Source: Leidyana gryllorum EB-2025a
Lineage: Eukaryota; Protista; Apicomplexa
Direction: 5' to 3'
Assembly (NCBI GenBank): GCA_048772705.1
Contig: JBLWGC010000159.1
Coordinates: 62,001-126,000, forward strand
DNA length: 64,000 bases
In this document: piece by piece, positions 46,610 through 57,595 of the stretch
Position numbering within the stretch: the first letter of the stretch is position 1
Layout of the letters: each line of letters opens with the position of its first letter
Notes under the pieces: model-generated
Told to the model about the DNA's origin: nothing
Seen by the model: only the letters and a program-made list of their open reading frames with translations
Databases searched by the model: none
Translations under genes and position numbers: made by a program

Positions 46610-49096
46610 ATGCAGAGAAATAGATTGGTGTGGTTAGAGGATGGAAAGTGCGATTGGGGGTGCGGGCACGACCAGAGGGTGGCCATTGATGTCTTGACTG
46701 TCCACCGAGAGGTGGTGGTGGACTCTGAAGGGTGCCGGGTAACTCATCACAACGTCGAGTGTCAGCCGTCAGGCATAGATGCCAAGTGTGTCCATGACGC
46801 TTCGACCAAACTGAGACAGTTGAGTAGGAGATATGATGAGCGTAATATGATAAATAAAGAAGGAAGTGAGGTGACCTATTACGCCCGTCTCAATATCCCG
46901 CCGCTTCAAGCGGACGAAAAGATCCAAACGCGTCACCTACACACTAAGGTGCGCCAAAAGGCGCCCTCCTACAAGTCCACACAGTCAACCACGCCCCCCA
47001 GATCAGTGGGAGACACTGATCTCGATGGATCAGACTTGGAGGATCAAGATGACGCCATACCCGTTTTGCCAGTGTCTCCACGCTCCACCAAACGCCGCAA
47101 GCCCAGACGATTGTCGCCCTCCAACGGCACAACCAATATTCGAATAAACGCCTCTGCTGCCAACAATGCCCCTCACCAATCAGAGAACAACACTACTCTC
47201 TCGCCTCCGGCCTCACAAGAGCGTCCTGTCGCCACGGCCGCCGCCACCGCAGCTGCTACGGCCTCTCCGCCTCGAAGTTTCACCGAGACATACGAGTATG
47301 AATGTTCGGAGAGTTGCGATGCTCCCTTTGGACTTGACGGAGGACCCAATACGTTCAGGGACACGGACGACGTGGAATACTATTCAGCTCCTCGGCGACC
47401 GCTCAAGGTGTCTCTGGACCCATTGCCCCCGACACCCCCCCCGTTGTCGCAGACGACACCCCCTCAGTCGGTGTCTCCATGGCCTCATTCCGGCTTGGAG
47501 TCCGTGGGATCCCAATCAATTAGTACCTCAAAGATACCCGCGACATTACACAGCGCCTCGGATTATCCCTCCACCCAGTTCGCACAACCTGATTTGCACT
47601 CCTATGCAGCATCCCAGTCCACATTGAGACCCGACTGGGTACCCCAAAGGTCGACCATTGGTAATCCCATCACTCAGACGACCACAACCCCTGCGACCGT
47701 CACCGCCCCCTCTGAGCCGACCGCTGCCGACGTATTCTTGCGACGCCGTCAATTCGAGCCGACACCCAATGTGCCCCGATATACCACCACAAACACTATT
47801 ACGGGTACTCCGAATGTTCCGACTGCGCATATGGGCAGATCCACCGTGGGAGGGACCACTCTAATGCCGCCGCCCAGCATCAATTCTCTGTTCCACCCGT
47901 CAGCAACAGTGACTACCACCACGACTACAACGAGTGCCTATCCTCCACCATATGTTCCATCGCGCTTGCCACAGTATCACCGGACGAGCCCCCCTCACAA
48001 CGGTCAGACCCCCACATTACCTCCGCATCCACCCACACTCCCACCCACCCGGACGACAATCGGCACTACGGCTCCGATACCCACTTATTCTCGTCAGCCA
48101 CAACCCAATCTTTACCGTCCAGTACGAAGTCGGGTATTGCGAACGTCCGTCAGTCCGCTGTTGGACGTTCGCACCACCCCTCTGAATGGGAGACAGACTC
48201 CGCCTCCCCTGCTGATGACAAATGTGGATACGCCTATCAATAGCTACACACAGCCACAAGCGACTCCGGTGGCGGCGTCATCAGTATCTCATTCGCGCCA
48301 GACTGCGCACGGGCGACCTGAAAACCTCGTCATCAGGTACATATCGGCTCCAAGTCAACAGGCTGAGGAGGCGACCCCACGAACACGTCTACCACACACA
48401 TATGTTGGTAACCACACATTCTTGTCTCCTCGCTATGACAAGACCCTTCGCACCCCCTCGCGAGATAATACCTCCTCGAGACACCTCGACCACTCTGCTT
48501 TGCCAACCCGACCACCCAAATACTTCCCCCCAGGAGAAAACAGCCGAGTGACCCCCAACCCGTCTGTCTATGGTGGTGGGCCGGCGCAGCATCAGCAGCC
48601 ACAAAGGTCTTCCACAGTTTTCCCGCGTTACATCGAGGCTTCCCCTAATTCGGCTGTGCCACCGGCCGCCACAGGATCTTTCGTGGGACGACCCCAGGCG
48701 CAGGCGCAACATCACCACTGTGTGCCCCATCCCTCTCATCAGTATGAGCAATACCCGCTTCCACGAATTCATGGCGTTGAAGGATCAGCGACCCCGCAGC
48801 AGCCAAGAAATAATGTATTTCGACCGTGTCCGATTGTGCAACAGCCCCCCGCGGGAGGACTGGCGAGTATACCACCCCCCCGAATTGAGCAATACCACAC
48901 TGTGAGACCGCAAGCTCATGTTTTACACGCGGCGGCGGCTCCTGACCAGTATACAACCCCCCCGAGTCATGTTATCAAGGATCGCGGTACATCCGAGACC
49001 AGTAAGAATCCTCCTCCTTTAAGCGGCAGCGGATCTCCCCGAAGATTGCGTAGTCGCACACGAATCAAAAGCGCCAGAACAGTAAAGTTTCATTAA
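46610..49096 (+). CDS. Hypothetical Pro/Thr/Ser-rich protein with small globular N-terminal domain
   Basis: 846-codon ORF; likely start is aaaaaaATG at 46610 (MQRNRLVWLEDG). Confidence 0.65.
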   Translation: MQRNRLVWLEDGKCDWGCGHDQRVAIDVLTVHREVVVDSEGCRVTHHNVECQPSGIDAKCVHDASTKLRQLSRRYDERNMINKEGSEVTYYARLNIPPLQADEKIQTRHLHTKVRQKAPSYKSTQSTTPPRSVGDTDLDGSDLEDQDDAIPVLPVSPRSTKRRKPRRLSPSNGTTNIRINASAANNAPHQSENNTTLSPPASQERPVATAAATAAATASPPRSFTETYEYECSESCDAPFGLDGGPNTFRDTDDVEYYSAPRRPLKVSLDPLPPTPPPLSQTTPPQSVSPWPHSGLESVGSQSISTSKIPATLHSASDYPSTQFAQPDLHSYAASQSTLRPDWVPQRSTIGNPITQTTTTPATVTAPSEPTAADVFLRRRQFEPTPNVPRYTTTNTITGTPNVPTAHMGRSTVGGTTLMPPPSINSLFHPSATVTTTTTTTSAYPPPYVPSRLPQYHRTSPPHNGQTPTLPPHPPTLPPTRTTIGTTAPIPTYSRQPQPNLYRPVRSRVLRTSVSPLLDVRTTPLNGRQTPPPLLMTNVDTPINSYTQPQATPVAASSVSHSRQTAHGRPENLVIRYISAPSQQAEEATPRTRLPHTYVGNHTFLSPRYDKTLRTPSRDNTSSRHLDHSALPTRPPKYFPPGENSRVTPNPSVYGGGPAQHQQPQRSSTVFPRYIEASPNSAVPPAATGSFVGRPQAQAQHHHCVPHPSHQYEQYPLPRIHGVEGSATPQQPRNNVFRPCPIVQQPPAGGLASIPPPRIEQYHTVRPQAHVLHAAAAPDQYTTPPSHVIKDRGTSETSKNPPPLSGSGSPRRLRSRTRIKSARTVKFH

Positions 49097-55319: not shown

Positions 55320-57595
55320 TCAATAGCGAGCGCCATAGCCATGTCCGTCGCCATACCGGTTACCTCCGCCGAAACGCCTTTGGGCCCCATAACCACCGTA
55401 CCCTCTACCTCCATGGGACTTGGACCCACCTGAAGAGTAGGCTAGTTGCTGCAGCTCAGGCGGCACCGGTTGAGAAGCCTCCTGCATGATCTTTATTAGA
55501 TCACGAGCCAGTCTACCCTTATCTTGGGTGATGAAGGAGTAGGAGCGTCCATGAGCTCCTGCTCTGCCAGTACGTCCGATCCTATGAACGTAGTCTTCGA
55601 TCTGGCCCGGCATGTCGTAATTGATGACGTTCTTCACGTCCTTGACATCCAAACCCCTTGATGCCACGTCAGTGGCGATCATGACGGGATGTTTTCCGCT
55701 CTTGAATTGCTCCAACACATATTTCCTCTCCTCTTGTTCTTTGTCGCCGTGAATTCCCAAAGCCATGAAACCTTCTGTGCGTAATTCTTTCGTTAGAATG
55801 TCAGCATTCCGCTTGGTTTCCACAAAGATGATCGTCCTCGCGTTCTTGTCTTGCTCGAGAATCTGGTTCAGCAAATCGCGGATTCTTTGACGCTTTTGGA
55901 ACTCCTGAAAGATGACTCATTGAAATGGAACTATGAGGCAAACGATTGCACAAGAAGACAGCAGTAGCAACAAAGCCCTCCTCCACTGTTGGACAAGCAG
56001 TGAACCACACGATAGCCCAATACCTGCAGTGCCAACCACCAAGACCCACACAGCGAAATTAATCAACGTGTCTTGCTCACCACTCCCACTGAAAATGTGG
56101 GTTGGGCTGGAGGGATCATATATATTTCCAGCGGAAAGTGCACCCTAAGATCATCATCACCAGTCTACCACCGACCAGTTCAAGATAATAGAGTAGCAGA
56201 AGCGCCTCTCGAGGAAAAATTAGTGGCATCAGTCGCTGCCTGCCTGCCTGCTCCTTCACCATTTTGAGCTAGTCTTCCGCAAAAGGAGACAGACAACAGA
56301 AGAATGATACCAATTTTCCCTCGATTAGTACCAAGAAAAGGGCTAAGCCACCCAGTTCCTTCCCTCCAGCTTGAGCCAGGGTGCCATAACGCGGCAACAA
56401 CCGAAACCATTGAATAGGGTACTCGGTTGACACACAATTGAAGAAGGGCACAACCGAACAGCCAGAACACACACATGAACACATAAAATGCTTATTACCG
56501 TGACAACTTCAACGATCTGTTCCACATTGTGACTAGCCTTCAATTCCGTAGACCCTAAAGAAATTGATTGTAGCTGAGACAGAACAGCCCGAAACTCTTA
56601 CCGATGGTAACATGAACAGGGTCTTCTTTGCAGAGATCCCGTGCAAGCGCTTGGACTTCTTTAGGCCAAGTAGCAGAGAACATAAGTGTCTGTCGATCGG
56701 GTCTAATTTGACCAACAATCTTCTTGATCTGGGGTTCGAAACCCATATCCAACATTCGATCGGCCTCATCCAAAACCAAATATGTCACTCTCCGAAGGTT
56801 GATCACGTCCTTCTCCAGGAAGTCAATGAGCCGACCCGGGCAAGCAGCCACAATCTCGCAGCCGCCGCGCAGTTGATTGATTTGTTGACGTCTAGGTGCT
56901 CCTCCATAGGCAACTCCGGTTCGACACCGCAAAGCGAATTTAACGGCCTCTTCTTTGATCTGTTCGACCAATTCCCGAGTGGGTGCCAGGATAAGTGCGA
57001 TGGGACCATCATCAGGCCGGAGTCTATCCTGGGCCTCAATGTGGACCACCGCGGGTAACAGGAATGCGAGTGTCTTGCCGGATCCGGTCTCAGCAATTCC
57101 AATCATATCCCGTCCACTCAAAGCAATAGGCCATGCTTGAAGCTGAATAGGACTGGGTGACTGGAAGCCGGCCTTGTACAACCTCTGAACTGTTTCGGTA
57201 GTGAATCCAGCGTCATCGAACTTGCAGATGGGATTAGGAGCAGGCCCGCCTGCAACGATGACGATTTGGTGCTCTCTTCGTAGCCGATCGACTTCCTCTC
57301 TTGACATCTCAGCAACTCGTGGTGACTCGTGGTAGAAATCCTTGCGGAAAGGCGTTAACGGAACATTCTTCCAATCAATGGTCTTGCATCCGCTTCCAAA
57401 AGCCCTGTCGGAGTTCCGGGTACTGCTCGAACTTCCCCCGTAACCTCCGAATCCACGGCTGCCTCCACCATATCCTCCAGAAGAACCTCCATAACTCCGA
57501 CTAGGTGACCGGGTACGGTTATACGGAGACGTACCGTATCCCGCTTGCTGATAAGGTCCTGAGGGGCCGAAACTAGAGGCTGCGTAGCTCGACAT
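55320..57595 (-). CDS. DBP2: DEAD-box RNA helicase DBP2/DDX5 (p68), 3 coding exons
   Basis: [69 protein letters not shown]; RGG/GY-rich tails. Confidence 0.98.
55905..56498 (-). promoter_or_regulatory. Long (594 nt) structured intron of DBP2 with candidate 8-nt poison micro-exon (56081-56088)
   Basis: Donor ACG|GTAATA at 56498 and acceptor TTTCAG|GAG at 55905; several perfect inverted repeats; internal TTTTCAG|TGGGAGTG|GTGAGC. Confidence 0.6.

What the first reader, a model, noticed from the sequence alone, without database searches (positions are those of the whole stretch)
55905..56498. Candidate helicase-sensing RNA switch: DBP2 intron with competing helices next to an 8-nt poison micro-exon
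Seen: the intron is 594 nt, over 10x the local norm. In the pre-mRNA it contains TTTTCAG|TGGGAGTG|GTGAGC, i.e. an acceptor, 8 nt (56088-56081) and a typical donor. Inclusion shifts the frame to [14 protein letters not shown], truncating the helicase before its second RecA domain. That acceptor sits inside the hairpin CCCAC-ATTTTCA-GTGGG. Just upstream, TCCCTCCAGC (56115-56106) can pair either with distal GCTGGAGGGA (56370-56361, 10 bp perfect) or with local GCTGGA (56132-56127). A second helix, GCACCCT (56384-56378) with AGGGTGC (56146-56140), crosses the distal one, so the two are either a pseudoknot or alternative folds. Established: yeast DBP2 and mammalian DDX5 carry a large intron near ASRGL|DV, implicated in autoregulation in yeast. 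Here that site is intron-free and the long intron lies elsewhere, after QIVEVVT. Inference: an independently evolved feedback loop in which Dbp2 remodels its own intron to toggle the poison exon.
Basis: partly seen in the sequence, partly recalled or inferred. Interest (0 to 1): 0.82.

Follow-up and report, generated by a model that had tools for sequence, protein, structure and literature searches.

The report
Ancient oversized intron in DDX5 helicase gene
This is a real, normally spliced 594-base intron in a gregarine parasite's DDX5/DBP2-type RNA helicase gene; the proposed 8-base poison exon looks like chance, but an oversized, often unspliced intron sits at this exact spot from Vitrella to Plasmodium, which suggests a so far undescribed self-regulation device.

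Summary
The stretch is a true GT..AG intron (56498..55905, minus strand) of a DDX5/DBP2-type DEAD-box helicase gene in a gregarine.

RNA contigs from a ~97% identical relative skip exactly these 594 nt. They show no micro-exon.

The micro-exon and the competing helices are not above chance:
- An acceptor-to-donor pair 12 nt or less apart arises in 20% of shuffles.
- A perfect helix of 10 bp or more arises in 10% of shuffles.
- 7-bp helices occur at the expected number.
- Orthologous introns lack such an exon.

What is above chance is the intron itself. The same phase-0 position carries an outsized intron in five other gregarine-like contigs (305 to at least 776 nt), Toxoplasma (1260), Plasmodium (1204) and Vitrella (1102). 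It is 4-12 times longer than neighbouring introns. Five transcriptomes hold unspliced forms that stop after RecA1.

The window's intron folds better than shuffles, on the sense strand only (z -3.1). A rod hairpin scores z -4.0.

Part of the intron differs from the relative three times less than synonymous sites do.

Best reading: a lineage-specific counterpart of the regulatory long introns of yeast DBP2 and plant DRH1. That function is inferred, not shown. The scan had noted this only on this same stretch.

The parts
55320..57595 (-). DDX5/DBP2-type DEAD-box helicase gene, ATG 57595 to stop 55320, 544 aa, Gly/Arg/Tyr-rich tails at both ends
   Evidence: Pfam DEAD (1.1e-49) on exon 1 and Helicase_C (7.1e-34) on exon 3. 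Best hits are named DDX5/DDX17/DBP2. The joined frame is open with a single terminal stop (local script).
56602..57595 (-). exon 1 (RecA1, through ..PVHVTIG)
   Evidence: Junction confirmed by RNA contigs.
56555..56601 (-). intron 1, 47 nt, GTAAGA..TTTAG
   Evidence: Contigs of runs X1 and X2 skip 47 nt here.
56499..56554 (-). exon 2, 56 nt (..[18 protein letters not shown])
55905..56498 (-). intron 2, 594 nt, GTAATA..TTTCAG, phase 0, between RecA1 and RecA2; single copy in the genome
   Evidence: Contigs at depth 39-44 skip exactly 594 nt. There is no other copy in the 15.5 Mb assembly. Rfam gives nothing. Fold z -3.09.
55320..55904 (-). exon 3 (EFQKRQRI.., RecA2, RGG-like tail); contains ASRGLDV with no intron
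56106..56370 (-). 265-nt structured domain closed by the perfect 10-bp helix GCUGGAGGGA/UCCCUCCAGC
   Evidence: Helix probability 0.98 in the ensemble and present in the MFE. A helix this long arises in 9.7% of shuffles.
56200..56335 (-). rod-like hairpin, about 45 imperfect base pairs, many G-U pairs
   Evidence: MFE -53.1, z -3.96, 0 of 200 shuffles as good. The antisense strand scores z -0.87. Inverted repeat I1.
56102..56353 (-). intron piece present as a 252-nt low-depth contig in RNA run X1 of a ~97% identical relative
   Evidence: It has 9 differences in 252 nt (0.036) against 0.119 per synonymous site in the same gene, Fisher p 0.004.
56081..56088 (-). the proposed 8-nt micro-exon TGGGAGTG between a CAG and the only internal GTRAG of the intron; judged a chance decoy
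   Evidence: It is absent from the RNA contigs.

Best explanation
The stretch is a genuine spliceosomal intron of the gregarine's DDX5/DBP2-type helicase gene. The main mRNA removes it exactly at 56498/55905. It occupies an old intron position: phase 0, after ..VEVV(T/S/Q) and before E-x-x-K, at the hinge between the two RecA domains. That position is shared with other gregarine-like contigs, Toxoplasma, Plasmodium and the chromerid Vitrella. At that position the intron is always several-fold to more than ten-fold longer than its neighbours, although its sequence is not conserved. It is repeatedly found unspliced in transcriptomes. The most likely function is a brake on the helicase's own expression. 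Slow or regulated removal of this intron yields transcripts that end shortly after RecA1 (here 52 extra codons, then a stop). This parallels the long introns of yeast DBP2 and plant DRH1. If a helicase-sensitive structure is involved in this genome, the best candidate is the 265-nt domain 56370-56106, made of the closing helix and the rod hairpin. The 8-nt 'micro-exon' and its small hairpins are not good candidates and are most likely decoys. Shown: the splice junctions, conservation of position and length, retention in other species, the in-silico structure, and reduced divergence of one intron piece. Inferred: the feedback itself and any sensing of the helicase.
For: Contigs of runs X1 and X2 skip exactly 594 and 47 nt. 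The same position carries a long intron elsewhere: L002 305 nt, L003 612 nt, L009 562 nt, L005 at least 359 nt, L008 at least 776 nt; Toxoplasma 1260 nt and P. vinckei 1204 nt, the latter the gene's only intron; Vitrella 1102 nt, with other gaps of about 150 nt or less. First-intron lengths for comparison are 47, 66, 104, 88 and 103 nt. There is no sequence similarity between the introns, so what persists is length and position. Truncated ORFs that read ..VEVxx then V plus junk plus a stop occur beside spliced isoforms in Polyplicarium, Digyalum oweni, TSA sets GHVS and GHVR, and Vitrella. The fold is sense-specific. Strong rod hairpins also occur in orthologous introns: L009 z -5.07, L008 z -7.50, L003 z -4.07. 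The intron piece differs from the close relative 3.3 times less than synonymous sites do. Precedents: the yeast DBP2 and S. pombe dbp2 introns (PMC4695336, citing Barta and Iggo 1995), and the plant DEAD hairpin in a long DRH1 intron (bioRxiv 10.64898/2026.01.23.701338). Perkinsus lacks this intron but has one outsized intron (about 674 nt against 47-62 nt) elsewhere in the same gene.
Against: There is no functional test. Gregarina niphandrodes has lost both introns and evidently manages without them. The sister contig L002 has no strong hairpin (best local z -1.6), and Toxoplasma and Plasmodium have none that stand out. Retained introns are common in transcriptome assemblies, and Digyalum also retains another intron of this gene. 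In the only RNA data for this lineage, intron signal is one contig at depth 2.3 against 39 for the mRNA, and none in the second run. The divergence test rests on that single low-depth contig. Rod-like MFE hairpins with 40 or more pairs occur in 2% of 130-nt windows here. No covariation could be tested.
Confidence: 0.45

Rival explanations
1. Dbp2 remodels competing helices or a pseudoknot next to the cryptic acceptor, so that the 8-nt exon 56088-56081 is included, shifts the frame and truncates the protein.
For: All motifs exist. GTGAGC at 56080 is the only internal GTRAG of the intron. Inclusion gives a stop after 14 codons (checked by hand). A plant relative does use a hairpin-hidden alternative 3' splice site in a long intron (bioRxiv 10.64898/2026.01.23.701338).
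Against: The main RNA contigs join 56499 to 55904 directly. The pattern arises in 20-57% of shuffles. L002 and L003 have no such exon. The alternative helices have probability 0.002 or less and the acceptor hairpin 0.29. The 7-bp and 10-bp helices are within chance. By general knowledge, an 8-nt exon leaves almost no room for acceptor and donor recognition at the same time.
Confidence: 0.05
2. A neutral relic: an old intron that simply stayed long, with no role. Its structure and the unspliced transcripts are by-products.
For: There is no sequence conservation between lineages. G. niphandrodes lost it. Local z-scores are unremarkable in Toxoplasma, Plasmodium and L002. One background chunk of the window also reaches z -4.3.
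Against: This genome's introns cluster at 40-49 nt. A neutral 594-nt intron should shrink there, yet the excess length is kept in nine lineages that share the position. The intron piece is 3.3 times less diverged than synonymous sites. The fold is sense-specific.
Confidence: 0.2
3. The intron hosts a small RNA. The rod hairpin 56335-56200 would be a Dicer substrate (an intronic miRNA- or siRNA-like precursor), or the intron would hold an unrecognised snoRNA.
For: The rod hairpin scores z -3.96, sense strand only. The genome encodes at least two Piwi-domain proteins and a protein with two RNase III domains. The only intron RNA seen covers the hairpin. Other long introns of this genome were noted as possible snoRNA hosts (unchecked notes).
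Against: Rfam finds nothing here or in eight orthologous loci. The one CUGA lies upstream of the only C-box-like UGAUGA, so there is no C/D layout, and there is no convincing H/ACA layout. No shared k-mers indicate a conserved guide. L002 has no hairpin.
Confidence: 0.12
4. The structure is a splicing aid. Long-range pairing compacts an intron that is oversized for a spliceosome tuned to about 45-nt introns, like the zipper stems of yeast introns.
For: Whole-intron z is -2.3 to -3.7 in all four complete gregarine-type introns. In L008 and L009 the hairpin starts about 25 nt after the donor. Yeast RPL7B gives a precedent (PMC12311795 abstract).
Against: The path length from the donor to the branch region in the MFE is no shorter than in shuffles for the window, L003 and L009. 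This would explain the structure but not why the intron stays long.
Confidence: 0.12

Closest known systems
Conserved long intron of yeast DBP2, S. pombe dbp2 and human DDX5 (Iggo 1991; Barta and Iggo 1995; Kilchert 2015, PMC4695336)
   Same: It is the same gene family. There is one outsized intron in an otherwise intron-poor or short-intron gene. Unspliced transcripts occur and are non-productive. The intron lies in or next to the helicase core.
   Different: The position differs. There the intron is at ASRGL|DV in RecA2; here that site is uninterrupted and the intron lies at the RecA1/RecA2 hinge. In yeasts the negative regulation is shown experimentally (helicase-dead mutant, Mmi1 and exosome decay). 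Here nothing is tested.
Plant DEAD motif in the long intron of DRH1/RH46 (bioRxiv 10.64898/2026.01.23.701338)
   Same: Both are DDX5-like helicases with RGG tails that carry a long intron holding a stable hairpin. The non-coding variants (cassette exon, alternative 3' site, retention) all carry premature stops.
   Different: DEAD is a single 19-20 bp stem with a 3-5 nt loop, with covariation across land plants and a verified alternative 3' site at its base. Here the hairpin at the cryptic acceptor is 5 bp (p 0.29). The strong rod hairpin is 120 nt away from it. No alternative site is verified and no covariation is available.
Poison exons and detained introns of RNA-binding-protein genes
   Same: Retention, or inclusion of the 8 nt, would place a stop before RecA2.
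   Different: No inclusion isoform is seen. The candidate exon is not conserved and is within chance.

Membership tests
DDX5/DBP2 subfamily of DEAD-box helicases (the host gene) | DEAD and Helicase_C domains with the full motif set | tested here: met
   Pfam PF00270 at 1.1e-49 and PF00271 at 7.1e-34. The motifs GSGKT, DEAD, SAT and HRIGRTGR are read in the ORFs.
DDX5/DBP2 subfamily of DEAD-box helicases (the host gene) | Closest relatives are DDX5/DDX17/DBP2 orthologs; Gly/Arg-rich tails | tested here: met
   Named hits (Babesia, Toxoplasma, Plasmodium DDX5/17, Perkinsus dbp2). The tree places it in a gregarine clade. The tails [19 protein letters not shown] and [19 protein letters not shown] are read.
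Fungal/animal conserved DBP2/DDX5 intron | Intron interrupts the ASRGLD|V region of RecA2 | tested here: not met
   Exon 3 reads through [14 protein letters not shown] without a break.
Fungal/animal conserved DBP2/DDX5 intron | Intron much longer than the genome norm | tested here: met
   594 nt against 47 nt for the neighbour and a 40-49 nt mode.
Fungal/animal conserved DBP2/DDX5 intron | Negative autoregulation that depends on the intron and on helicase activity | not testable with these tools
   This needs genetics. Only indirect support exists, from retention isoforms in relatives.
Plant DEAD helicase-sensing hairpin | Located in a long intron of a DDX5-like gene with an RGG tail | tested here: met
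Plant DEAD helicase-sensing hairpin | 19-20 bp stem with a short loop that covers a used alternative 3' splice site | tested here: not met
   The cryptic acceptor sits in a 5-bp hairpin of probability 0.29. The RNA contigs show no alternative site in use.
Plant DEAD helicase-sensing hairpin | Covariation supporting the stem across species | tested here: inconclusive
   The orthologous introns cannot be aligned. Only 4 substitutions are known in a close relative, which gives no power.
Poison micro-exon | Inclusion isoform present in RNA | tested here: inconclusive
   It is not in the assembled contigs of X1 and X2. Contigs drop rare variants, and the raw-read run X11 held no reads of this organism.
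Poison micro-exon | Splice-site pair beyond chance and conserved in relatives | tested here: not met
   The pattern arises in 20-57% of shuffles. It is absent from L002, L003, L005 and L008.
Intron-hosted snoRNA | C/D or H/ACA boxes in the right order, or a covariance-model match | tested here: not met
MITE or other repeat insertion bounded by the 10-bp inverted repeat | Further copies in the genome | tested here: not met
   Only the intron itself matches in the 15.5 Mb assembly at E up to 10.

The most novel reading that the evidence does not exclude
Apicomplexans and chrompodellids carry their own helicase-sensing autoregulatory intron in DDX5/DBP2. It would have been fixed at the RecA1/RecA2 hinge before these lineages split. 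Structured RNA inside it (here the 265-nt domain with the rod hairpin; near-perfect hairpins just after the donor in L008 and L009) would be opened by the helicase to shift the balance between productive splicing and retention. This would be a third independent solution beside the fungal/animal and plant ones, and Perkinsus, with an outsized intron elsewhere in the gene, could be a fourth.
Probability: 0.25. Interest if true: 0.8.

Novelty: new variant of a known kind. Interest (0 to 1): 0.55.

Why it matters
DDX5/DBP2 helicases remodel RNA genome-wide, and their dosage is tightly controlled in yeast, humans and plants through a long intron in their own gene. The same gene keeps one outsized, retention-prone intron at a different, lineage-specific position from Vitrella through Plasmodium, Toxoplasma and gregarines. 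That points to recurrent evolution of one regulatory solution. It also gives a concrete, testable element in genetically tractable parasites: remove the intron, or over-express live versus dead helicase. It separates what is probably signal (position, length, a structured domain) from what is probably noise (the 8-nt exon, the short helices).

Tried and rejected
- Rfam at a permissive E-value on the window region and on eight related loci gave nothing relevant.
- A snoRNA box scan found no valid C/D or H/ACA layout.
- The repeat/MITE idea for the 10-bp inverted repeat failed because the intron is single copy.
- I looked for alignment or shared motifs among the orthologous introns. Only chance-level 9-11-mers turned up: TGTTCGGTT in three introns (p about 0.12), and an 11-mer over the cryptic donor shared with Toxoplasma but in an unrelated context.
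- The 'zipper' test of donor-to-branch path length did not differ from shuffles.
- The test of whether the relative's four central substitutions spare the structure had no power, since 33% of random sets are as mild.
- Ranking the rod hairpin by raw MFE within the window gave nothing extreme, because GC-rich windows dominate.
- Raw-read RNA run X11 and RNA run X7 held only other organisms' DEAD-motif sequence and nothing of this gene.
- Literature searches for an apicomplexan DDX5 intron found nothing.
- The coding position of the plant DRH1 intron could not be learned from the preprint text.

Full report
**Anatomy**

The finding lies in a minus-strand gene. The ATG is at 57595. Exon 1 runs to 56602, intron 1 is 56601-56555 (47 nt), and exon 2 is 56554-56499. 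Intron 2 is 56498-55905 (594 nt, GTAATA..TTTCAG, phase 0). Exon 3 runs from 55904 to the stop at 55320.

Exon 1 matches Pfam DEAD (1.1e-49) and exon 3 matches Helicase_C (7.1e-34). The closest named proteins are apicomplexan DDX5/DDX17/DBP2 orthologs. Both ends carry Gly/Arg/Tyr-rich tails. Earlier notes call the genome a gregarine-like apicomplexan of 15.5 Mb. The assembly size is confirmed. A protein tree puts the gene in a well-supported clade with Gregarina niphandrodes, Protomagalhaensia and 'Gregarina sp. Poly'.

Database searches were made exon by exon, by reference. The joined coding sequence was built only inside local scripts, for tblastn against loci already fetched and for codon counts.

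**The observation**

Inclusion of the 8 nt would give [14 protein letters not shown]. The ASRGLDV site is intron-free. A crude ORF-bridging scan of the window shows a peak of candidate introns at 40-49 nt, so 594 nt is indeed more than ten times the norm. The literature part also holds. The DBP2/dbp2/DDX5 intron is conserved in position, and the yeast gene may be autoregulated through it (PMC4695336, citing Iggo 1991 and Barta and Iggo 1995).

**RNA evidence**

Two runs, X1 and X2, hold assembled contigs of 2.2-2.7 kb at depth 39-44. The contigs are about 97% identical to the gene and skip exactly 594 nt and 47 nt. All 14 listed exon differences are synonymous. The contigs therefore come from the mRNA of a very close relative or strain, spliced at the outer sites with no 8-nt insert.

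X1 also has one 252-nt contig at depth 2.3 lying wholly inside the intron (56102-56353), so the relative has the intron too. Contigs cannot exclude a rare isoform. The raw-read run I laid (X11) contained nothing of this organism. Micro-exon inclusion at a low level therefore remains untested.

**Chance**

- With a simple definition (a pyrimidine-rich YAG followed by GTRAG, GTAAN or GTTAGT), 57% of dinucleotide shuffles of the intron contain an internal exon candidate of 60 nt or less, and 20% one of 12 nt or less.
- A perfect inverted repeat of 10 bp or more appears in 9.7% of shuffles.
- Perfect 7-mers number 10 against 11.9 expected.
- In the partition function the distal 10-bp helix dominates (p 0.98). 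The local GCUGGA alternative has p 0.002, the 7-bp helix has p 0, and the 5-bp acceptor hairpin has p 0.29. The model is nested, so a pseudoknot cannot be scored.

The 'competing helices' are therefore not supported as a switch.

**What is not chance inside the intron**

- The whole intron folds better than shuffles on the sense strand only (z -3.09; sense -3.1 against antisense -0.27).
- Of 25 background 594-nt chunk-strands from the same window, one reached -3 (which timed out after printing these).
- The signal is concentrated in a rod-like hairpin at 56335-56200 (-53.1 kcal/mol, z -3.96, 0 of 200 shuffles). On the opposite strand it is unremarkable (z -0.87). This hairpin had been noted separately by the scan (s1-592492).
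- The 10-bp helix closes a 265-nt domain around the hairpin. The low-depth RNA contig covers almost exactly this domain.
- That piece differs from the relative at 9 of 252 positions (0.036), against 0.119 per synonymous site in the same gene (Fisher p 0.004). This is suggestive of constraint, but it rests on one thin contig.
- The four central substitutions leave the fold energy unchanged. Random sets do so in a third of trials, so this has no power.

**Relatives**

A word-based protein search with exon 1, followed by contig look-ups, gave genomic DNA for related genes. The same phase-0 position carries:

| Source | Intron at this position | First intron / other gaps |
|---|---|---|
| Window | 594 nt | 47 nt |
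| L002 (sister of the window's gene, 99/95 support) | 305 nt | 66 nt |
| L003 | 612 nt | 104 nt |
| L009 | 562 nt | none in the region |
| L005 | at least 359 nt (contig ends) | 88 nt |
| L008 | at least 776 nt (contig ends) | 103 nt |
| Toxoplasma gondii | 1260 nt | other gaps about 205 nt or less |
| Plasmodium vinckei | 1204 nt | the gene's only intron |
| Vitrella brassicaformis | 1102 nt | other gaps about 150 nt or less |

Gregarina niphandrodes has lost both introns. An unnamed more distant locus, L006/L007, has none at this site. Perkinsus olseni reads straight through the site but has a roughly 674-nt intron elsewhere in the gene, next to introns of 47-62 nt.

The introns share no sequence beyond chance and hit no Rfam family. 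What is conserved is the position and the excess length.

**Retention**

Several transcriptome-derived proteins end with ..VEVxx followed by V (the GT of the donor), some junk residues and a stop. These come from Polyplicarium, Digyalum oweni, TSA sets GHVS and GHVR, and Vitrella. Where the database has them, spliced full-length isoforms exist in the same assemblies. This shows that unspliced poly(A) RNA of this intron is common enough to be assembled in five species. Retention is not exclusive to this intron, because Digyalum also retains another one.

**Structure in relatives**

All four complete gregarine-type introns fold better than shuffles (z -2.3 to -3.7). In L003 and L009 the antisense strand does too. 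Long hairpins stand out in L009 (z -5.07), L008 (z -7.50) and L003 (z -4.07). In L008 and L009 they start about 25 nt after the donor. L002, Toxoplasma and Plasmodium have nothing comparable. A stable hairpin is therefore frequent in these introns but not universal.

**Interpretation**

The best-supported reading is an old, lineage-specific counterpart of the regulatory long introns known from yeast DBP2/dbp2 and from plant DRH1. In DRH1, a hairpin in a long intron senses the helicase and diverts splicing to non-coding forms. I put about 0.45 on a self-limiting role through inefficient or regulated removal. I put about 0.05 on the micro-exon switch as written.

The remaining weight goes to three rivals:
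- a neutral relic;
- a hosted small RNA, which stays open because the genome does encode Piwi-domain and double-RNase III proteins;
- structure that merely helps to splice an oversized intron; here the path-length test was uninformative.

I found no paper describing this apicomplexan intron, within the limits of the held library.

Noticed in passing
L009:1155-1285: A 130-nt hairpin (z -5.07) starts about 25 nt after the donor of the orthologous intron. Its 5' arm reads CUUACCUCU, like the 5' end of U1 snRNA. It pairs with AGAGGUAAGA, a consensus donor, in the 3' arm. The stem also encloses a 58-nt acceptor-to-donor candidate exon that is not a multiple of 3. It looks like a sequestered poison exon and is a better candidate than the one in the window.
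   Followed up: partly
L008:2015-2125: A nearly perfect hairpin of about 100 nt (-47.4 kcal/mol, z -7.50, MFE frequency 0.45) lies 27 nt after the donor of the orthologous intron in an unnamed AT-rich relative.
   Followed up: partly
G000:C121:208175-209125, C121:41751-42719, C43:450907-452273; G000:C216:125254-126984: The gregarine genome encodes two clear Piwi-domain (Argonaute-type) proteins and possibly a third. It also has one large ORF region with two RNase III domains (Dicer-like). An RNAi pathway is therefore probably present.
   Followed up: no
L004 (Gregarina niphandrodes KK211482.1, 3001-4683): The ortholog is a single uninterrupted ORF of 560 aa. Both introns shared by its relatives are gone, as expected after loss through a reverse-transcribed copy.
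   Followed up: partly
L013:1187-1860 (Perkinsus olseni): The dbp2 ortholog lacks the apicomplexan intron. It has one intron of about 674 nt after PYLQRG, while its neighbours are 47-62 nt. This is another outsized intron in the same gene at a third position.
   Followed up: partly
window 48001-48594, + strand: This background control chunk folded with z -4.26, and z -2.46 on the other strand. That is stronger than the intron under study.
   Followed up: no
window 56460-56452, L003:1707-1715, L002:3842-3850: The 9-mer TGTTCGGTT occurs in three orthologous introns, near the 5' end in two of them. It is within chance (p about 0.12).
   Followed up: yes
P0085 (Plasmodium yoelii, 338 aa) and P0021 (labelled Ixodes scapularis, 332 aa): These public protein models of this helicase stop near the position of the long intron. 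P0021 ends ..VILLQDFEK, just past it. P0085 was judged from its length and domains only. They are probably truncated annotations, and the tick entry is probably a parasite sequence.
   Followed up: no
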